In this document: positions 15,390 to 27,005 of the stretch, in pieces
Layout: each line of letters starts with the position of its first letter
Numbering within the stretch: the first letter of the stretch is position 1
Source of the DNA: Trichoplax adhaerens
Lineage: Eukaryota; Animalia; Placozoa
Length of the DNA stretch: 64,000 bases
Reading direction: 5' to 3'
Assembly: GCF_000150275.1 (NCBI RefSeq)
Contig: NW_002060943.1
Location: 12,947,639 to 13,011,638 of the forward strand
Program-made: the position numbers and the translations under genes
The notes under the pieces: model-generated
The model's input: the letters and a program-made list of their open reading frames with translations, nothing else
Databases searched by the model: none
Told to the model about the DNA's origin: nothing

Positions 15390-15695
15390 GCAATGGCGGA
15401 ACAGTTTTCAACTAGTACAGTGCAGTATTGTAGAGGGCTTGCCACGCCCGTGAAAAAAATGCTCTCCATTTTTGGCTTCAATGGGGCATAATTGAGTTAT
15501 GTCACGTGTCTTTGTCAGACCATTCTTGACGTCTGATTGGCTGATAGACCACTTGGGTTGATGAACCTTCAAACCAACTCATGTTATTGTGCGTCACTTG
15601 CGGTACAGTGGACAGTACGTACAATGCGCCACGATCCTGGTACTGAAGAATTCATAGTAAACCAACAACAGACCAGGATAGTATGTACGGTAAGG
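15390..15695 (+). promoter_or_regulatory. Putative promoter and non-coding exon 1 of the ODC-family gene
   Basis: Locally GC-richer island with GCCACGCCC (Sp/KLF, 15441), CACGTG E-box (15503), TGACGTC CRE-like (15527), CTGATTGG reverse CCAAT (15533) and TGCGTCA (15590). Donor-like gtatgt and gtaagg at 15681 and 15690. Confidence 0.55.
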
Positions 15696-15786
15696 TATCG
15701 CTGGTAACGTTGGCAGTGGCTTCTCCGATGGTATTTGCGTCAAGCGCTCAGGAGGGGGTGGTTGCTTAATTTAATTTAAGCATATC

Positions 15787-16147
15787 TATATGTATACCTA
15801 CTTATTTATTATAATTATAATTATTGTAGCAAATTTCTATTGCTTACCACTTTCCATTTTGATAACGTGAAGATAACTTCTACTCAGATAATCCAAGACA
15901 AGTCATTATATTATTCAGTGCAATAGTCCTCTTGGTAAGATCCTTTGCATTTTAGGGATGTTTTTGGTGGCAACCCTATATGTATGCCTTCTTATATATT
16001 ATAATTATAATTATTGTAGCGAATTTCTATTGCTTACCACTTTTCATTTTGATAACGTGAAGATAACTTCTACTCAGATAATCCAAGACAAGTCATTATA
16101 TTATTCAGTGCAATAGTCCTCTTGGTAAGATCATTTGCATTTTGGGG
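15787..16147. repeat. Near-identical direct duplication, 2 x ~170 bp (period 190)
   Basis: 15787-15957 and 15977-16147 differ at only a few positions. Confidence 0.9.
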
Positions 16148-16314
16148 GTTAAGCAGCAGTCAACACGGTAAAAGTCAACGCTTTTTGTGCACTGATTTTC
16201 ATTTTTCAATCGGGTAATGATTGTTGAAATGTAGAAAATTCCAGCTTAGTAAATGCGTCAAAGTGAAATCGTTGGGATTTTTGCAACGGTACTACTCAAG
16301 CCGTTCGTTCCACT

Positions 16315-17020
16315 TGGATAAATGATACACGTCTGAAATTGATAATGCTTTGCTTAAAATTTTATTTTGATAATTGTATATAATTAAGTATTAAATACAC
16401 GCGGATAAATGATACAAGTCTTTTAAAAGTTATAATACTTTGCTTAAATTTTACTTTGATATTTATAATGAGTAATAGTTACAATACTTTGCTTAAATTT
16501 TACTCTGATAATTGCAGATAGTTATTGTACAATGTACATACGCGGGTGAATGATACATATCCAAAACTTACAAAGCTTTGCTTACATTTTACATTGATTA
16601 TTATAATTAGTTTTTGTACGTACGGCAATAAATAGTACACGTATGAAAGTTACAACGCTAAGCTTAAGTTTTAATTTGATAACTCTAATTAGTAATACAG
16701 TACTGACATTGCTTTGCTTAAATTTTACCCTGATAATTATAATTGGTTATTGTACAATATACCTACGGGGGGGTGAACGATACATATCCAAAAGTTACAA
16801 AGCTTTGCTTAAATTTTACTTTGATTATTACAATTAGTCGAGTACACGTTCAAATGAACGGGAACATTTACTACACAACATACTGCACTGAACAAGATTC
16901 AGAGCTAGGTTATCAGACTATCTATCAATCCCTTCTCAGTGTGAGATAATATGAGCTGCTTCAGTAAACTTTATTGTATACTTTGCGTAAATTCTACTTT
17001 GATAATTAGTTATTGTACAT
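16315..17020. repeat. Degenerate tandem repeat with core CTTTGCTTAAATTTTACTTTGAT
   Basis: Core recurs near 16348, 16438, 16487, 16576, 16712, 16804 and 16981, often preceded by aatgatac. Confidence 0.8.
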
Positions 17021-19321
17021 CGGGAATTTATTGACCCAGTGTCCTTTTCTATGATTTGGAATATTATTAACGAATACTCCATTAATAATTTATTTTATAT
17101 TTTCACTATCGAAAGATGTATTTAGTATTGCAGCCTCTCATTACGTAAGAATTCTTCCGTCATTATTCAATTAGTAGTTCACATTTACTCTTTCAACTGA
17201 ACCTACTTTACGGTATCCTCAGTACTAATTCACCAAATGCTTTAATGGTATATTGCTGGACTAATTATTTTTGTGGGTAATAAGTTGCTAATGATAAGTA
17301 TATGAAACTATTTAGGCTTATTTTCACAATTTTATCGTTTTAGCAGATGGTTATGCACATTTTAAGGTGCAGATTCGATACTAGTCTAGTATGTAGCACT
17401 TCTTTTATATTAGAAACATCAATCAGGCATTTGCTAACATAGAAAACTGTAAAGATAGCGGTTACGCTAGTTATCAAAGGAGTGGATTTTAGGTAATCAA
17501 TGTTCATAACACCTTTTTAACCCAACGCCAAAGAATGTCAAGCACGAAAAATCAAAAAGAATTTTTGTGATTCTTCCGTAAAATTTGTTTAATACTTCAA
17601 TCTAGATTATCCGTAAAAATAAGCAAATTGCATTCTTTTAGGGCAATTTTGTCTCCAAATGCTAACCGTGTTACTTCTAGTAGATTTTAGATCAACGAAA
17701 TTTTAAATGAATATTGATTATCATTTTAATTTACAAACATTAAAGATTTAGTTTTCTACAACTCCTGGCAGCATGACTGTAAATAAATAGCTACTGATTC
17801 AAATCTGGCAGCATCGTATGGCAATAGCTGTCTAATTCAAGTATAAAATTGATTCGATTAAATTTCATAAATCTCAGTCAGATAATAACCTGCCAATTTT
17901 TCGTGGACGTTTGCTAGCTTATATCACTATAAGCTGCTTTAATACAGTAAAACCTTAGTTAAATCGATTACCAATATTTATAATCTATAAGCCAGTACTT
18001 GCATACTTCCCCTTAATATCTACGTGTTGAATGTTTTAATTCATAATTCTGTCATCTCGCCAGCCTAATTTATTTCAGATTGATAAATACATTATCATAA
18101 TAATTGTTAACGTGTAAGGACCCATTTGGCACTACCATAGCAGGATATTTTATTTATAGGAGTAATTTCAGTCTTTTATACAAGTACGGCTTTTATTAGA
18201 TGATTTTTCACTTTTAATGATGATAGAATTCCATGTAACACTATTTTTTATCAATTGGTTCGCAATAGTTGGTTTTAAGATTACTGCATTACTAATGCAA
18301 AGGATAACTGCGGTTGGAAAACATCATTAAATAAATATTTGAGACAGCAGAAAGCATTTAAATTAGTAACTATAATTGCAAGAAGCATGCTATTTCAAAG
18401 TTAATTATGGCATTTCACTAGTCATAACATTATTTTAATGTACTTGTTTTAATCACAGTAGCAGTTCAACAAAACTTCCGAATGGACTATTAGTTTTTCG
18501 ACGGATTAAAGAAATGAAAAATTGTAGGGAACAGATATAGCCTTTTACCACTTAGTATCACAGCTTAATTAATCTTTAAAAGCTTTATTAAAGGTATTAA
18601 AAATATTAGATGATTCATAACGATATTATGTGGAAACATCTATTCTCATATTTATGTGTTTGCTAGATAAAGGTGCTTGATACTTATAATGTTATAATTG
18701 TCGATCGTATCAGGAAGTTAGATAGTAGCTTGATTTAAAATTCGAAACATACATCCAATCCGAAGATCTTAGTTTATTTTCTGATGAGATATGTGTTTGT
18801 TAATTTTATATTCTGTAGCAATTTTAAATATTATAATTGGCCAAATTGGCATTTGACAGAAAACACATTTGCTTTTGAGAAATCAATAAGTAGCAAGTGA
18901 CTGTTCAATTCGCAATAGTAGATAAATCAGATAACCTTTAATGGGTGCTTTCATGGGAAAATCTTGTACAATTAAAAATAATCTACTTAACTCTTACTTG
19001 ATTAATATCATAAATGAATCAAAATTCTAGTATAAAAATTTTGTTAACTCGAATTAATTATTAATAGAATTAAAATAATTTATTCATTCATTATCGATTA
19101 GGCAAGTCACAGATATTATTTCTAACTTATCATCTTACATTAGTTATGTCATAGTTCTACCAGAAGTTCTAGTACCTTATTATAGATGTGGAGTGCCGGT
19201 TTAATTCAAATCTGATTAGTCGTTCGAATTATCGTTCGATAGCTTTATTTCTTCATGAATTAAGCTATACTGTTTTCTTGGATTTTAAAAGGTCTTTACA
19301 GTTATTTCTTCATCAAGATTA

Positions 19322-22300
19322 ATGGCAACTGCTAGTACAACGATTGTTAATGATAGCCCTCTACAAGTTTTACCATCTATAGACCTTCCCAACCTAATAC
19401 AACGCAAAGCTACTGATCATATGGTAGGTTTTCTTTTATTACAGGCAGACTGACTAATTACGGAAAAAGCCATTACTTGATTGTTACGATTCTAGTCAAC
19501 GTATTTTGTAGATTAGTTTGTTGTTTTCGTAAATTGTTTATTACATTAGATGATAATCGAATGTGAATTAAATATTTTAATGATGATATTTAACTCAGTA
19601 TCAACATTACTTATTATTTCATCTTGATGAGTTGCTATTAATTAAAGTCAATTAATTGATTTAGTGGTGCTGAGTTTCTAGGTCCTAGTTGGTCATTAAT
19701 TGATTTATTAAAAATTAAAGTTGTTTACTGTTGGACTCTATAGTGAGTTATATTATAAATTTTCTGTCTTATTTTATACTAATGCAAGTAAATTGTAGAA
19801 CCAGCATACTTTAGCTATACCCCATAAGTGTATTGCAATTGTATATAAGCTCATATAGCGTTTTGTTTACTCAGTTGCTATTTCTTAGTTTTGCGATAAG
19901 GTCTATACTTTTTGTGTACACTTAGAATAAAATTCATTTAGTTAAACCAGCTTCTAGCCACTCATAATACTTGTGAGTCAGTAGTTAGTCTAACTTTCGG
20001 CACTCCTCCTTAGTTAGTAGAAATCTTTAGGTAGCTAGTAAGGTAGTTTAATAAGATCATATACCAGAAGAGTAAATCGTGACATTGATATATTACAAAG
20101 CATAGCAGATTCAGTGACTAAAGAAAAGTATTCGTAATATTTCTACAATAGCAATGCAATGACGAACCTTTCAATATTGTTGATATTGGTGATATAGTCC
20201 ACAAGATTAAAATGGTAAGCAGATGATAATAAACCCTCGAATATATCATGTGAAACACAGATAACCAAATTGCACATTTCCAGTTAGAAAGTGTACAACT
20301 ACGCTTTAGTCTACTATAACAAAAGACATAGCATTAATCCTGAAGTAAATGCTGATATAATGTATTTATAATAACAGTGTTTAACAATGTCTATTGAGAT
20401 CGAAGCTTTATAGAAGTATTGATATTTCAGTAAAATAACAAGAAATATCTCAATTGTATTTTTTCTATAACTCTATAACTTAACAATTATTCTTCATCTT
20501 CTTGATTTGGTATTACAATTATAAATGAAATTGCGAGACATAATTTGACATTTCTTTGTTAAGTTTTAGTTTGTAACTGTAAAGAGTTGGTAAATAATAA
20601 TGCTTTCAATATTGTGCAATATATTTTACTAAAAATTCGAATTCGCAATTTCGTTAAAGATTTTTACAATTGTCAAGTATTACTTACTATCTAGAGTTAA
20701 TGTTAACTACGGTATTTAAGGTTTTACTATTCTCAACTGGCATAGGAGGTAGGGATCGGTACAAGTGGTTAAAGTTAATATACAACTATCTACTAATCTC
20801 CACACCCTCGATTACTTAAAAAACGGCCATGTTTTATGTTTAGACTGTCCACAGTTGTAATGTACGAGTATTGTGTGCCTAACAATTATTATATTGTACG
20901 ATAGTAGATTAGTGATAAAGTGGAATTAAGAATCGCAATGAGGTTTCCAACTTACTTAAGCGTAATCCTCGTAAAAACGAAAATTTTGGTAATAACTTTT
21001 ATTGCATGTCACTAAAAATTAGTCACAAGCATTAGGTCATTTTTAGCAAATGTAAGTTGGTAATGAGATCATGCTAACGGTAATCTGTAACAATAACAGG
21101 TTTATAATATATCAAATTCAGCTAATATTGAATTAAAGTACACATGCAATCGTATTAAATGTATAGCAGCTAGGAACTTAGTTATGTCCGAATTTTTTCG
21201 TTGCAAAATATATACAATCTAATAAATTATTACATAGCAGATAATGCCGCAATATTTATACCCCGATTACTATTTAAGTTACAAACCTTAAACGATGAAT
21301 AACTCACTTAAGATCTATGGGTGCATGGGTATTTAAGCGTCGTCATATGAATAACAAATGCTTTAATCCCATCATACATGATACGTTTTCCAACAGTTGA
21401 AGTATTTGAGAACTTAAAGAGTCTTTACAAGTGAGAACTTTCAATGGCAGACAAAAGTTAAAGATTTAGTTACACTAACTAATCGAATTGTTAACAGTAT
21501 AAATGATGAAGTGCAGAATTTTGTTGATATAAACAACTTGATAGCAGATAAAAAGGCATTCACTTTTCCTGAGATGATAATGTAAAGTTACCTTCTTACA
21601 TTGATATAAACATACATTTATTATTCTTGGCTATAAATCATGCAGTGGTTTTCTCTCCTGCCTCGTGTACATCCTTATTTTGGTATGTTCACATTTTAAA
21701 ACTGAATCTATTCAGATTAAATTCACCTTTAAAATTAATGCATGAATTATATATATACTTCTAAAAAACATATTGACTTTGCTACTTGCATAACTAGCCC
21801 TAAAATGTAACGTTGATAGAGGATTTTTAGCCACTTTACTAGCCTTTGGATTTGGTTTTGAAGGTGTTAGTAAGGTCAGCATAAATTTTAATTTTTAACA
21901 ATTTCAGCATAGATAGTAGAATAGAATTAATCGTATCATGTTATAGTAATTATCATAACTATTTTATTAACGGATTAATTAAATATATCATTTTATGAAG
22001 GCTGAAATCGATACAGTTTTGAAAATGGGGGCTTCACCTGAAAAGATTATTTTTGCTAATCCATACAAGCCAATTTCTCATATAAAGTATGTTTTAATAG
22101 AGTATCATGTTTAAAGTAGAAATAAGGTAAATCGTTAATAATATGACGATTTTAATAATATCCATAGTATTATTAAAAAGCGAATGTACATGGGCTGAGA
22201 GTAAATAAATTAATTAGACTACTTAAATAAATTCTGGGTATTTAAGATACGCTGCTCATCAAAACGTAAATCTGATGACATTCGACAACGTCACAGAATT

Positions 22301-24518
22301 ATATAAGATCAAAGAGTTTTATCCAAAAGCAAGGTGAATTATTTAATACCCTCCTATTAGCCTATAGCACTATATCTCGAAATTAATACTTTTTATATAA
22401 CGGCTATCAATGTGAATACATTAGGTTACTTTTACGTTTAAAATTTGATGATCCTAGATCGAAGTATGAAGTAAGTTATTATCACTTATTTACGCACGTA
22501 GCCTAAAAAGATAGTCATGATCGTATAGTAAGTGTTTTCATGTTCCTTACGATGCAGTTGGGTAAAAAATACGGCGTTGAAATTGATGAAGTTACGCATA
22601 TACTACAGATAGCGCGCGAGTTACAGCTAAATGTCGTTGGAATTAGGTAAGTAAATTAGCAGTATTCAATCAACTATCTAGACTTAAATATTCGATTAAT
22701 AATTTACAGCTATGTAAACGTTTGGTTAACTGTTTTTTTATCAGCATATAAGAATAATGCAAATTACATCTACTTATTGTTATATAATAGCGCGTGCATA
22801 CGTTCATTTATGGGATTAATAGTTGAGATTGTTATGATTACTTCATTTAGTGTCGATATTGCCTTGTCGATTAATTTATTTGATCTATCCACTTGAATTT
22901 TCGATAGTTATCACGTCGGTGGCGGATATACCGATGCCTGTAATTTTTTGAAAGCTATAGAATTAGCTAAAACTGCCTTTAATTATGCGGTATTCATAAA
23001 TACATTGACGACTAAATTTTATGATAACATAATACTAAACATGTAGTTTAAGTTTATAATAAATGTCGAGTAGATTTTAATTCAAATACTTAACCCTCGG
23101 AATAACAGAAATCGATAGGAATTAATTTTAATGTTTTGGATATTGGTGGTGGATTTCCTGGCCAAGCAAATTCACTTTTTAAGAAAGTACGAGGATCTAA
23201 ATTGACATAGTTAATAGATCAAGAACGAAATTTTAAATATATTTAGTTTTTCAAATATTTTTGTCTAGATTTGTAGCAATATCAGCAGCGCTTTAGATAA
23301 GCATTTCCCAGTTGAAGACAACATTAGCATTATTGCTGAGCCCGGTAAAACTTCCTTTTTTAAATACCGTTTTAATCTCGATTATGATCTAATTTAGCAA
23401 TCAATTTCTATCATAAACACAGAGCCTAAGAATGGCAATTAATTATTAATCTTAGGCTTTATTATCCTCGTTTAATAGGTAGATATTTCGCGGAAACTGC
23501 CTTTACGTTAGTTCTTTGCGTAGCTGGCAAACGTGAAATTTATGAAATTGATCAGAAGATTCCAGTTTATAGTAAGATTCATAGGAATTATTAGGCCTCA
23601 TGTAATTGTGCTTTCCAATATTGGATATTTACGGTGGAGTTAATGTGTTGTCGCAATTTAATTGATTGACAATTATAAAACGCTAGATAAAGGATGTATT
23701 AAAAAGAAATTTAGAAATGAGGCCTGTAATAAGGTACGGCAGTAATATCCAAGTCTACAATTAATTCTTGAGTGCAGTAGTAATGCTTTGTTTTTGAAAT
23801 TTTATTAAAGAAAAAGTTTGAATATTACGTCAATGACGGGCGTTATGGATCCTTTTCTGAATTTTTAATGAGCTACGGATGTCAGTATCCTCAAGTTATC
23901 GGAAAGAAATCTGAAACGTTATATTCAACTCGTCTTTGGGGACCCACTGTTAGCGGATCGGATTGTATATTTGAGGAATGCTACCTTCCTGAAGTAAGAA
24001 CTTGTTGTAATATTAAAGACGTGACTTATTGATAAAAATTTGAAAGTATTGATGAATTTGTCGACAGTTACAAGCTCAAGCGATAGCATGTAATCAGTCT
24101 CAAAAACTTTCTGTATCATCCTTAGCTAAATATTGCTGACAATTACGTAATATTTCTATCGTAACACACTGTAGCTCGAAGTAGGGGATCTAATTTACTT
24201 TGAAGGTAAGAAAAAATTATAATCTTATCAGGAAAGAGACAATACCATAACAAATGTTTTATCGACAATCTTGATAGAAATGGGAGCCTATACGACAGTT
24301 TTAGGTACTAATTTTAATGGACTTACTAGACCTGTTTCATACTATGTCATTGATCAAGGGATGTGGTAAGACCAGCACTTTCGAAACTTATTAACGTTTT
24401 ATCATTACCTGGATTTAGAACTTGTGAAAACCCAGCTTATAATTGAATTTTTAACAGGAACGTGGCTAACCATAAATTATTGACAAAATTCAAGGCCGTT
24501 GATGAATACTCAGCGTAA
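19322..24518 (+). CDS. Ornithine decarboxylase / antizyme inhibitor family protein (group IV PLP fold), ~441 aa, with an altered active site
   Basis: 17 GT-AG exons join in frame: 19322-19423, 20152-20214, 21646-21682, 21798-21874, 22001-22086, 22247-22333, 22425-22470, 22558-22646, 22908-22989, 23109-23186, 23269-23344, 23479-23571, 23687-23733, 23811-23993, 24175-24205, 24278-24365, 24458-24518. Motifs: PYFALKCN, IIFANPYK, MTFDN, SYHVG, LDIGGGFPG, IAEPGRYF, YYVNDGRYGSF, WGPTVSGSD, MGAYT, FNGL. Confidence 0.9.
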
Positions 24519-25002
24519 ATAGACACATTTAATTAGATAGAATATGAGAGTATGCATATCCACGAAGGAATTACTACTTAAGCGCATTATTAGATAAATC
24601 ACAAATTACAAAGCTAAATACTGCAATGATGAGTGTTGAATTTACGCCGTTATTTCATTTATTCTTAGGTATTACGAAGTTACAGTACAATAACAAGGCT
24701 AAGATGTAATAATTGCTCTAATGATACCTAATATATGCAGTATTGTAAAAATAAGTCATTATAATTAGGAGATAAATTAGATGAGTACATAAAATTTAAT
24801 ATCAGTATGTAATCGTTCTGTAACGCCTAATATAGATGCATAAGATTTTACTCTGTGAAATAGCAGAGCCTATATCATAGACCTAAACATAATTATTGAA
24901 GTTCGCGTACCATGATTGCCAGTAGTATTATTACTGGAAGCAAATAAGCACATATTAAAGAATAAAATGATTGATTATTACTGGCTACTTTCGGAGAATT
25001 TA

Positions 25003-25411
25003 TAATCAACTCACGCTTCAACATTTGTATAAATCCTTATAACGAAGTACAGTGAATGTTAATCTGATTGATAGATATGGAATTGATAAAATTGGTAAAT
25101 AATAGAATTTTATAATTAAAAGCGGATACAGTCGGTGATTATGAAGTCATATATGAGTATTTTGTCCTAAATATCACTAATATTCTTCATAATCTAGCCG
25201 TAATTTATTACAATACGTCCTTATCGAATATTACTTCCTGTATTTATGATAATAGCTGATAGTGTTAGACAACAAATACCTTTTATTATCATTAATAATC
25301 ATTTCCATTTCAATCTTTTATTATAAATTTGTAAATGTTAACTCCTGCTATTTGTACAATTTGCCGCTGTAAAACTGAATGTTACTTACATCGAAATTAT
25401 TTCGTATTGAA
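25003..25411. repeat. Dispersed ~410-bp repeat, copy B
   Basis: Same orientation as, and collinear with, 4782-5192. Confidence 0.8.
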
Positions 25412-27005
25412 TGTATTATGTTTCATCCGAAATGTGAATTTCTTCCCTTCAGATTTAGTTATTTAACGTGTTACACAGATTTAATTCCCATTAGCTTATC
25501 TAGACTTTACAGATAGCCTTACCATTTTACAATATTATTATTGTAATATTAACATTAATATTGCAGTTCCAATTTGAAATCTCTGAAGTTGACTATATTT
25601 CCCGATTCAATTTCATAAATTTATTTTGTTAGCATGAATACAACATGTTTTCCAAACACCTTTTATTTATGTTTACTTTAGTAAACCAAAACTAAATGCA
25701 ATCACGAAATGAATCCTACTTAATGCTTTAATGCAAGCACCATCGATTGATTGATCGTACCACTTCAATAGACATTTTCCCTATCAACCTACTCTTATAA
25801 TCTTCTTAACTATGTCTACAGACAAGCTCAGCAGCTGAGATACTCAGATCAATTCTCCAATCAATACTTTAACTGTATTCTGCAATGGAATACGTTTATT
25901 TCAAAGAGTATTAACACCAACATAAGCTTACTTCCTGAACGACTATCTGCTGTTACGCAGTTGCTTCTTTACTGTGCTACAACGATATACTACCAAGGTC
26001 CAATGAGTTCAACGACTTGACCTAATACGATACCATAAATTACAAACAGATCTTGAAAGCTAAATCTTCACCTTTATTTTTACTCATAAAATTGAATCTA
26101 CGCTAAATTAAGGAGACGAATGTTGTTAATAAAGAGATGACAGAAGAGTAAATTACATCATATCTGGTGGCCATCGTGATAGAGAATAACTAAAACTCTA
26201 AAGTAATCCTGCTCAATTTATCCAACAGATTAAAAGAAAACTAGAAATAGAAGCTAGAAATCAAGGACCGATTTGAAACACTCAATCTTACGCTATTGTA
26301 AAATATTACAAAAACCATCCATGGTAGAGTCTCTCTTGAATAGCCAAAATGCAGAGAATCATGCTACAGTTCCATCTCATCAAAACGCGATAATCATTAG
26401 ACAGATAGATGCAATCTTTCCTTGTTTCGGCTACAATTGAGATCTTATCACTACTTGCCATTGATCGGCAAGTAGTGATCATTTTGATGTTATAAGATGA
26501 TGCAATTCTTGACAACGTAAAATTCTATCACGCACTAAATTAGTAAGATTGAACAGTAAAAAGGCAGATACAAAATAAAGGAAATTTATTATGCAGACTT
26601 TCAATTCAAACTATTTCTTTATCTACGTTGAGCTGCTTCATTATTTTACACACAAGGTATATCGCAAATCTAGAATTTATAATCCCAGCAGCAAAATTTA
26701 CCTGCAATAATTTTTTTCATACTGTTAGAAAGTATTTTGTCCAATGTCGATGTAGGAAAAAACTTTATAGTAAATATTGCAAAGTTACTATTACAAACTA
26801 GATAGTATAAATGATTTAGATTTCTTCGTTCTTTTTTATGCTAATATTGTAGTCTAGCATTGAGATCATTCCGTATAATATGAACAAATGTGCAGCTTTC
26901 AATCAAATTCTTTAACCGACAAGCCTTAACAGATCGCATTTTCATCGTCTATCCATCTAGATAAAAGAATTATATTTACAAGGTGTATTATAATTATCGG
27001 ACCAG

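What the first reader, a model, noticed from the sequence alone, without database searches (positions are those of the whole stretch)
19322..24518. ODC paralogue with intact PLP site but rebuilt substrate pocket: new decarboxylase or early-animal antizyme inhibitor
Seen: the gene is intact, with 17 in-frame exons, canonical splice sites and no stops. In human ODC numbering it keeps K69 (ALKCN), R154, K169, H197, G235-237, E274, R277, Y323, D364, Y389 and F397/N398. It changes GPTCDGLD to GPTVSGSD (C360V, D361S; 23949-23954), NCILYD to SEFLMS (C328E, Y331M, D332S), V322R, GFDCAS to GFEGVS (D88E) and S200G. Known: C360 controls protonation and reaction specificity, and D332/D361 bind the ornithine delta-amine. 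Vertebrate AZIN2 has Val at 360, AZIN1 lost PLP contacts, and the mouse ODC paralogue Gm853 decarboxylates leucine. Inference: cofactor residues are conserved while amine-binding acids are lost together. That fits a PLP enzyme for a non-basic amino acid, which could make an unknown amine messenger, better than decay. The alternative is an independently evolved antizyme inhibitor.
Basis: partly seen in the sequence, partly recalled or inferred. Interest (0 to 1): 0.82.

Follow-up and report, generated by a model that had tools for sequence, protein, structure and literature searches.

The report
Divergent ODC-like gene of Trichoplax
This is an intact, selectively maintained copy of the ornithine decarboxylase gene in the simple animal Trichoplax; it keeps its vitamin-B6 cofactor site but has lost the residues that hold ornithine, so it almost certainly does something else, either a new decarboxylation or a regulatory role.

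Summary
Window 19322-24518 (+) carries 17 in-frame GT-AG exons (441 codons). An 18-nt upstream exon at 18295-18312 gives the 457-aa form annotated in Trichoplax sp. H2.

The gene is TRIADDRAFT_19621 of Trichoplax adhaerens, publicly labelled "ornithine decarboxylase".

Kept: K69, R154, K169, G171, H197, G235-237, E274, R277, Y323, D364, G387, Y389, F397, N398. Changed: D88E, S200G, V322R, N327S, C328E, Y331M, D332S, C360V, D361S, L363S. Two independent assemblies agree on GTT-AGC at 23949-23954.

It is not decaying: dN/dS is 0.23 against its closest paralogue, and exons diverge less than introns between H1 and H2.

It is one of about a dozen ODC-like loci in this genome. Only one (C1408) has the full canonical residue set.

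It lies in a placozoan-only clade, so it is independent of vertebrate AZIN1, AZIN2 and Gm853.

Function is open. I favour a PLP enzyme that no longer uses ornithine (0.4). An antizyme-binding or heterodimer-forming regulator is not excluded. ODC paralogues with changed key residues were already described (Ivanov 2010), so this is a new member of a known kind.

Elsewhere in this genome the scan flagged the canonical ODC leader and another "respecified PLP decarboxylase", but not this gene.

The parts
18295..18312 (+). Upstream exon 0 (MQRITA), followed by a GT donor. It gives the 457-aa form annotated in Trichoplax sp. H2.
19292..19423 (+). Exon 1. It starts at 19292, after an AG, if exon 0 is used. 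Encodes the ODC N-terminal segment.
20152..20214 (+). Exon 2 (QCNDEPFNIVDIGDIVHKIKM)
21646..21682 (+). Exon 3 (WFSLLPRVHPYF)
21798..21874 (+). Exon 4. Carries the Schiff-base Lys69 (codon 21803-21805, ALKCN) and D88E (21860-21862, GFEGVS).
22001..22086 (+). Exon 5. Carries K115.
22247..22333 (+). Exon 6. Encodes the region equivalent to the antizyme-binding element (residues about 122-150). A123, E138, L139 and K141 are kept. Positions 125 and 140 are His and Tyr.
22425..22470 (+). Exon 7. R154 is kept (LLLRLKFDD).
22558..22646 (+). Exon 8. K169 and G171 are kept (LGKKYG).
22908..22989 (+). Exon 9. H197 is kept; S200G (SYHVGGGY).
23109..23186 (+). Exon 10. The PLP-phosphate loop G235-G237 is kept (DIGGGFPG).
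23269..23344 (+). Exon 11. E274 is kept (IIAEPG).
23479..23571 (+). Exon 12. R277 is kept (GRYF).
23687..23733 (+). Exon 13. A basic loop (NKGCIKKKFRNEACNK) stands in place of the acidic loop of mammalian ODC. The exon is absent from the public T. adhaerens model and present in the H2 model.
23811..23993 (+). Exon 14. Changes: V322R, N327S, C328E, Y331M (23868-23870), D332S (23871-23873), C360V and D361S (23949-23954), L363S. Y323 and D364 are kept.
24175..24205 (+). Exon 15 (LEVGDLIYFE)
24278..24365 (+). Exon 16. G387, Y389, F397 and N398 are kept (MGAYT...NFNG).
24458..24518 (+). Exon 17 and the TAA stop. The short C-terminus has no equivalent of the mammalian ODC C-terminal tail.

Best explanation
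The gene encodes a dimeric, PLP-binding enzyme of the ODC (alanine-racemase-like, group IV decarboxylase) fold. It arose by DNA-level duplication inside the placozoan lineage and has been re-specified away from ornithine.

Shown:
- The gene is intact and under purifying selection.
- The residues known to contact PLP in ODC are kept: K69 (Schiff base), H197, the G235-237 and R277/Y389 phosphate contacts, E274 (pyridine N) and R154.
- The K169-D364 inter-subunit pair and G387 are also kept.
- The two acids that hold the distal amine of ornithine (D332, D361) are Ser.
- The Calpha proton donor C360 is Val.

Inferred:
- It binds PLP and forms ODC-type dimers.
- It does not decarboxylate ornithine at a useful rate.
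- It acts on an amino acid without a cationic side-chain end.
- Because C360 is lost, catalysis is slow or is diverted towards decarboxylation-dependent transamination, as in C360A/S mutants of T. brucei ODC (from my own knowledge of Jackson et al. 2000, not checked here).
- The substrate cannot be named from sequence.
For: - 17 (or 18) clean exons, matched by the H2 model.
- 14 of the 18 'key' ODC residues of Ivanov 2010 (listed in table 2 of PMC5574924) are kept at only 51% overall identity to the canonical Trichoplax ODC. These include every listed PLP contact except the mild changes D88E and S200G.
- dN/dS is 0.23 against paralogue B over 302 codons, and all pocket residues are identical in the two copies.
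- Exons are less diverged than introns between H1 and H2: 4 differences in 1326 nt against 31 in 3871 nt.
- A 59%-identical relative on a metagenome scaffold shares S361, S363, M331 and the loss of D332. It keeps E274, R277, D364, G387, Y389 and F397, so the new pocket is older than the genus.
- Family pattern: about ten further ODC-like loci in the genome keep K69-type and mostly C360-type motifs but vary at D361 (S, T, G, N) and in the 327-332 loop. This looks like diversification of substrate pockets rather than many redundant regulators.
- Positions 125 and 140 are not the Lys residues that give AZIN1 its high antizyme affinity.
Against: - C360V removes a residue counted as one of the two essential catalytic residues. 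The same change occurs in planarian ODC5, which is of unknown, putrescine-independent function.
- N327, Y331 and D332 are exactly the positions where the non-catalytic AZIN1 differs from ODC.
- All five conserved antizyme-binding-element residues are kept.
- The only characterised animal ODC paralogue with a new substrate (Gm853/LDC) keeps all critical ODC residues. No precedent therefore links this residue pattern to activity.
- There is no biochemical, expression or structural evidence here.
Confidence: 0.4

Rival explanations
1. An independently evolved antizyme inhibitor. The protein is catalytically inert towards ornithine, binds the placozoan antizyme through the conserved 117-140 element, and so frees the canonical ODC.
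For: - K115, A123, E138, L139 and K141 of the antizyme-binding element are all kept.
- N327, Y331 and D332 are changed. AZIN1 differs from ODC at the same positions, which there weakens dimerisation and raises antizyme affinity.
- C360 is lost, as in mammalian AZINs.
- Recurrent origin of such forms has been proposed by Ivanov 2010.
Against: - Positions 125 and 140 are His/Tyr and Tyr, not Lys. The canonical Trichoplax ODC itself has K125.
- R277, Y389, K169, D364 and G387 (dimer residues) and the whole PLP site are kept, which an AZIN does not need; AZIN1 lost PLP binding.
- About a dozen such paralogues is too many for this single role.
- No antizyme gene was found with PF02100, although that search is uninformative. 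One exact frameshift-site-like 14-mer was found, but no antizyme domain was detected downstream of it.
Confidence: 0.2
2. A pseudoenzyme partner. It heterodimerises with the canonical ODC, or with another ODC-like paralogue, and inactivates or modulates the shared interface active sites. This is the 'ODC inhibitor' idea of Ivanov 2010, analogous to trypanosomatid prozymes. Alternatively it is a PLP- or ligand-binding sensor without turnover.
For: - Dimer-interface residues K169, D364, G387, F397 and Y323 are kept.
- Changes lie on both halves of the composite site (D88E, S200G, Y331M and D332S on the K69 side; C360V and D361S on the partner side). Either hybrid site with ODC would therefore be defective (inference).
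- The idea is discussed for planarian ODC5/6.
Against: - Full retention of its own PLP contacts is not needed for poisoning a partner.
- AZIN2 does not heterodimerise with ODC.
- No co-expression or interaction data exist.
Confidence: 0.2
3. A young pseudogene or functionless duplicate that has not yet acquired stops.
For: - H1 and H2 differ in the coding sequence by 3 nonsynonymous changes and 1 synonymous change, a ratio near neutral, though n = 4.
- Sister copies are decaying. Paralogue B lacks usable exons 6 and 10. C1397:1.138 Mb has an in-frame stop. C1397:1.2016 Mb and C1278 are fragments.
Against: - dN/dS is 0.23 over a dS of 0.40.
- All 34 splice signals and 441 codons are intact.
- Exons are 2.7-fold less diverged than introns.
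- Pocket residues are shared with a 59%-identical relative.
Confidence: 0.07

Closest known systems
Eukaryotic ornithine decarboxylase (mouse 7ODC, human 2ON3/1D7K, T. brucei 1F3T); canonical Trichoplax ODC TRIADDRAFT_27475
   Same: - Same fold and domain order (PF02784 + PF00278).
- E = 1.8e-99 to mouse ODC over residues 24-418.
- 51% identity to the canonical Trichoplax ODC, and its exons align piece by piece to that gene, which suggests shared intron positions.
- PLP contacts and dimer salt-bridge residues are kept.
   Different: - D332S, D361S, C360V, Y331M, N327S, C328E, L363S, D88E and S200G.
- A basic loop (exon 13) stands in place of the acidic one.
- There is no long C-terminal tail.
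- There is an extra N-terminal extension with no acidic residues (2 Arg, 9 Ser/Thr in 25 aa).
Catalytically altered ODC homologues / putative antizyme inhibitors of invertebrates (Ivanov, Firth and Atkins 2010; planarian ODC2-6, PMC5574924)
   Same: - A lineage-specific ODC duplicate with substitutions in a few of the 18 key residues, alongside one fully canonical copy.
- C360V also occurs in planarian SMED-ODC-5.
   Different: - A placozoan lineage.
- The particular set D88E, S200G, C360V, D361S, together with loss of D332.
- I could not read the 2010 paper, so I do not know whether it already lists the Trichoplax copies.
Vertebrate AZIN1 (3BTN, 4ZGZ) and AZIN2
   Same: - No C360.
- Changes at N327, Y331 and D332.
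- The conserved antizyme-binding-element residues are kept.
   Different: - It scores lower to AZIN1 than to ODC (253 against 337 bits).
- It keeps K69, R277 and Y389 and the PLP site that AZIN1 lost.
- It lacks K125 and K140.
- Its origin is independent: a placozoan-only clade.
Mouse Gm853 / leucine decarboxylase
   Same: An animal ODC paralogue that does not use ornithine and does not bind antizyme.
   Different: Gm853 is reported to keep all residues critical for ODC activity, whereas this protein changes four of the 18. The origin is unrelated (vertebrate duplication).

Membership tests
ODC / group IV PLP decarboxylase fold (Pfam PF02784 + PF00278) | N-terminal TIM-barrel PLP domain followed by a C-terminal beta-sheet domain, with significant profile matches | tested here: met
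   Exon-wise Pfam hits are collinear on PF02784 (positions 49-241) and PF00278 (25-82). P0001 and P0232 carry both domains. E = 1.8e-99 to mouse ODC.
ODC / group IV PLP decarboxylase fold (Pfam PF02784 + PF00278) | Schiff-base lysine and PLP contacts (K69, H197, G235-237, E274, R277, Y389, R154) | tested here: met
   All are present in the alignments to mouse and human ODC. Actual PLP binding was not tested.
Functional ornithine decarboxylase (EC 4.1.1.17) | [quoted passage not shown] | tested here: not met
   D88E, S200G, C360V and D361S, i.e. 4 of 18 are changed. D332S and Y331M lie outside that list.
Functional ornithine decarboxylase (EC 4.1.1.17) | Decarboxylation of L-ornithine to putrescine | not testable with these tools
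   An enzyme assay is needed.
Antizyme inhibitor (functional class) | Binds antizyme more tightly than ODC and rescues ODC activity | not testable with these tools
   Only proxies are available. The five conserved antizyme-binding-element residues are kept. The affinity-raising K125 and K140 are absent.
Antizyme inhibitor (functional class) | An antizyme gene exists in the same genome | tested here: inconclusive
   The PF02100 six-frame search was blank, but so were all controls. One exact TGGTGCTCCTGATG was found at C1398:34663-34676(-), but the downstream ORF pieces give no PF02100 hit.
Vertebrate AZIN1/AZIN2/Gm853 orthologue groups | Descent from the vertebrate-lineage ODC duplications | tested here: not met
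   The gene falls in a placozoan-only clade with paralogue B, TRIADDRAFT_60920 and a metagenomic fragment (98/99 support). All Trichoplax copies group together in the quick tree (98 SH-aLRT). Vertebrate sequences themselves were not in the tree.

The most novel reading that the evidence does not exclude
Placozoans have expanded the ODC fold into a family of about ten amino-acid decarboxylases with different substrate pockets. This gene is the intact representative of one subfamily, with the pocket S361/S363/M331 and no D332. The family would make non-polyamine amines, or, with V360, aldehydes by decarboxylation-dependent transamination. These could serve as small-molecule signals or defence compounds in an animal without neurons.
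Probability: 0.25. Interest if true: 0.75.

Novelty: new member of a known kind. Interest (0 to 1): 0.45.

Why it matters
If the protein is an active enzyme, it would be only the second animal ODC-fold paralogue shown to have left polyamine synthesis for another amine, after mouse leucine decarboxylase. It would point to an unexplored set of small amines in placozoans, whose cell-to-cell signalling chemistry is largely unknown.

If instead it binds antizyme or ODC, it would be a clean independent origin of an AZIN-like regulator at the base of animals.

Either way, the family-level pattern is a ready-made natural experiment on how the ODC pocket is re-specified: one canonical ODC plus about ten copies that vary at D361 and in the 327-332 loop. 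As it stands, this is an annotated gene of unknown function that fits an already described evolutionary pattern.

Tried and rejected
Exons were searched one by one by reference. Full-length work used the public ids P0001 and P0232. Codon statistics were summed exon by exon.
- Antizyme: the PF02100 six-frame search of the genome found nothing at E <= 10, but the control rang nowhere, so this is uninformative. A pattern search for the frameshift site, typed from my memory of vertebrate OAZ1, gave one exact hit. The hit lies right after an AG acceptor, with a 'WCS*' / +1 'DA...' reading. Eight downstream ORF pieces gave no ODC_AZ hit. This stays unresolved.
- Upstream uORF with a P-x-W motif, as in ODC/AZIN leaders: only one unconvincing single-frame match in 15500-19330. 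Spliced uORFs could not be searched.
Several paralogues (C1397 arrays, C1373, C1413) were therefore seen only in 3-10 kb pieces and not fully modelled.
- Ivanov et al. 2010 and the 2008 uORF paper are not held. The 18-residue list was taken second-hand from PMC5574924.
- No paper mentions TRIADDRAFT_19621, RDD39368 or B3RKL2.
- Rejected, sequencing error at codons 360/361: two assemblies and a paralogue agree.
- Rejected, orthology to vertebrate AZIN or Gm853: the gene sits in a placozoan-only clade.
- Rejected, bacterial contamination: it has spliceosomal introns and its exons align piece by piece to those of the canonical ODC gene.
- Not run: structure prediction and complex prediction. With E = 1e-99 to solved ODCs the fold is not in question, and a predicted dimer would not separate the hypotheses.
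Full report
**What is there.**
The window is AT-rich (about 30% G+C). It is part of a 105.6-Mb assembly of 1414 contigs (G000:C1414:12947639-13011638).

Three-frame translation of 19200-24700 shows a chain of short open segments that read as an ornithine decarboxylase. After fixing the boundaries by hand I get 17 exons. Every acceptor is AG, every donor is GT and the frame is continuous, for 1326 nt = 441 codons plus TAA.

I never built or searched the joined H1 protein.

Exon-wise Pfam hits are collinear on PF02784 (Orn_Arg_deC_N) and PF00278 (Orn_DAP_Arg_deC).

**Identity of the gene.**
An exon-14 search of the 50% representative library returned a 351-aa protein that is 100% identical over the exon. 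The word search and cluster look-up name it TRIADDRAFT_19621 of Trichoplax adhaerens (XP_002108385.1, UniRef B3RKL2 'ornithine decarboxylase'), on a contig of 13,260,704 bases.

That public model is partial. It lacks exons 1, 2, 13 and 17.

Its 90% cluster also holds RDD39368.1 of Trichoplax sp. H2 (P0232, 457 aa). That exon (ATGCAAAGGATAACTGCG followed by GT) is in the window at 18295-18312. Exon 1 can then start at 19292, after an AG.

I used P0232, which differs from H1 at 3 residues, as the by-reference full-length proxy.

**Residues.**
- Kept: K69, R154, K169, G171, H197, G235-237, E274, R277, Y323, D364, G387, Y389, F397, N398.
- Changed: D88E (also C89G, A90V), S200G, V322R, N327S, C328E, I329F, Y331M, D332S, C360V, D361S, L363S.

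Against the 18 'key' residues of Ivanov et al. 2010 (as tabulated in PMC5574924), four are altered: D88E, S200G, C360V and D361S.

**Not an error, not decay.**
The H2 assembly (NOWV01000138.1, L050) aligns to 17000-26000 at 99.39% identity. The differences fall as follows:

| Region | Differences | Length (nt) |
|---|---|---|
| Exons | 4 (F57L, H126Y, N426K, one synonymous) | 1326 |
| Introns | 31 | 3871 |
| Flanks | 20 | 3804 |

None of the differences lies in exon 14. Exons are therefore about 2.7-fold less diverged than introns. The 3:1 nonsynonymous:synonymous count is too small to interpret.

A deeper comparison is with the closest paralogue, C1414:7297691-7302270 ('B'). Twelve exons align without gaps. 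Nei-Gojobori counts summed exon by exon give dS 0.40, dN 0.09 and dN/dS 0.23 over 302 codons. GFEGVS, SEFLMSY and GPTVSGSD are identical in both copies.

**The family in this genome.**
Pfam and exon-14 searches of the whole assembly find about a dozen ODC-like loci. Exon-wise tblastn shows the following.
- C1408:4309573-4312756(-), TRIADDRAFT_27475. This is the only copy with the full canonical set (VKCN, GFDCAS, FHVGSGC, NCLLYDH, GPTCDGLD, MGAYT, FNGF).
- This gene, plus copy B.
  - In H1, B is interrupted by an assembly gap and has a degenerate exon 10.
  - The H2 model of B (P0002) lacks exons 6 and 10.
- Fragments of the same subfamily at C1397:1201532-1201969 and on C1278.
- TRIADDRAFT_60920 (C1397:1.131 Mb), with GFDAAS, FHIGGG, GNVLHDF and CSGLD.
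- Its neighbour at 1.138 Mb, which has an in-frame stop.
- A tandem array of four at C1397:0.94-0.97 Mb, with C360 kept and D361 replaced by T, T, G and N.
- Copies on C1373, C1362 and C1413 with CDSLD.

The exons of this gene align one by one to those of the canonical gene. This suggests the copies arose by DNA duplication rather than retroposition.

Among all 232 proteins fetched, VSGSD occurs only in the Trichoplax proteins.

**Relatives elsewhere.**
The best non-Trichoplax full-length hits are ordinary animal ODCs, at 44-47% identity. The canonical Trichoplax ODC is 55-60% identical to the same proteins. This gene is therefore a fast-evolving derivative.

One 65-aa representative (P0003) lies on an ENA metagenome scaffold of 32% G+C (L049). 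The scaffold carries exons 12, 14, 15 and 16 of a gene that is 59% identical in exon 14.
- It shares D361S, L363S and Y331M, and has lost D332 (Asn).
- It keeps C360, E274, R277, D364, G387, Y389 and F397.
- It has His at 323.

The loss of the two ornithine-binding acids is thus older than the Trichoplax genus. C360V, V322R and C328E are recent.

**Phylogeny.**
A quick ML tree of 49 sequences puts all Trichoplax proteins in one clade (98 SH-aLRT). This gene and B (100) are sister to the 60920 pair (99).

A careful tree of 30 sequences recovers {this gene, B, L049 fragment, 60920 pair} at 98/99. It leaves the link of that clade to the canonical Trichoplax ODC unresolved.

No other animal's sequence falls inside the clade. 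Vertebrate AZIN1, AZIN2 and Gm853 were not available by reference and are not in the tree. Independence from them rests on the placozoan-only clade and on the higher score to ODC than to AZIN1 (337 against 253 bits).

**What it does.**
From established ODC structure-function work (my own knowledge of the T. brucei and mammalian literature):
- K69, H197, G235-237, E274, R277, Y389 and R154 hold PLP.
- D332, and D361 of the partner subunit, hold the distal amine of ornithine.
- C360 of the partner protonates Calpha.
- K169-D364 and G387 support the dimer that forms the two interface active sites.

Here the PLP set and the dimer set are kept under purifying selection at only 51% overall identity, while both acids are lost. 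Ornithine decarboxylation is therefore very unlikely (I put canonical activity at about 3%). Selection on something that needs the cofactor site is likely.

The family-wide variation at D361 and in the 327-332 loop, with K69 and mostly C360 retained, looks like pocket diversification. I therefore favour a PLP enzyme with a non-cationic substrate (0.4). V360 would make turnover slow or divert it to transamination.

**Why I do not go higher.**
- The review PMC6313458 states that AZIN1 differs from ODC at R277, Y331, D332 and Y389 (dimerisation) and at N327 and Y331 (antizyme affinity). This gene changes N327, Y331 and D332, so the 'rebuilt pocket' is also an AZIN-like signature.
- The five conserved residues of the antizyme-binding element are all present.
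- C360V recurs in a planarian paralogue whose knock-down phenotype is putrescine-independent and unexplained.
It does not link this residue pattern to activity.

Against the AZIN reading:
- K125 and K140 are absent.
- The PLP site and most dimer residues are retained.
- There are too many such paralogues for that one role.

I could not show that Trichoplax has an antizyme.

**Context.**
Neighbouring genes in the H2 locus are a 7TM receptor, an unknown protein, a DcpS/HIT protein, a MaoC dehydratase and an LRR/EF-hand protein. They suggest no metabolic cluster.

No paper in the library names this gene, and none discusses a placozoan ODC family.

**Verdict.**
Its class, a lineage-specific ODC paralogue with altered key residues next to a canonical ODC, is already described, and the gene is already annotated. 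I therefore rate it a new member of a known kind, with moderate interest that rests on an untested enzymatic reading.

Noticed in passing
G000: C1408:4309573-4312756(-); C1397:941617-965610(+); C1397:1130694-1139417(-); C1373, C1362 and C1413:9732773-9735848; loci L003-L045: Trichoplax has about a dozen ODC-like loci. Only one (C1408) has the full canonical residue set. They include a tandem array of four in which D361 is T, T, G and N while C360 is kept. The family as a whole, rather than this one gene, may be the more interesting object.
   Followed up: partly
G000:C1414:7297691-7302270 (L036, L007, L019); P0002 (H2): The closest paralogue (about 85% identical per exon, same VSGSD/GFEGVS pocket) appears to be decaying. 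Exon 10 (the GGG loop) is degenerate next to a 50-N assembly gap. The H2 model lacks exons 6 and 10. Its N-terminal extension (MELLTRSLYFRGYAAVNRIFPTISSSRL) looks like a mitochondrial presequence.
   Followed up: partly
Over its first 25 residues the protein then has no acidic residues, 2 Arg and 9 Ser/Thr. This may be an organelle-targeting signal, and the two start codons could give two localisations.
   Followed up: partly
G000:C1405:1987845-1989056(-) (L001:1093-2304) and C701: An intronless 403-aa ORF inside a 2.47-Mb scaffold is a bacterial-type diaminopimelate decarboxylase (TIGR01048 lysA, 368 bits against a cut-off of 298). It is either a horizontally acquired gene or DNA of the endosymbiont. 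A second copy lies on the 2.2-kb contig C701.
   Followed up: partly
G000:C1398:34663-34676(-) (L051:1501-1514): This is the single exact genomic match to TGGTGCTCCTGATG, the vertebrate-type antizyme +1 frameshift site as I recall it. It lies 8 nt after an AG acceptor and reads ...GKWCS* in frame 0 and DAFRT... in the +1 frame. No ODC_AZ domain was detected within 1.5 kb downstream. It may be the unannotated placozoan antizyme, or it may be chance (about 0.1 expected).
   Followed up: partly
L049 (ENA ERZ23499115, scaffold_7561, 3482 bp): A metagenome scaffold of 32% G+C carries the 3' exons of a placozoan-like ODC paralogue, 59% identical in exon 14. This implies DNA of a placozoan, or something close to one, in that environmental sample.
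   Followed up: no
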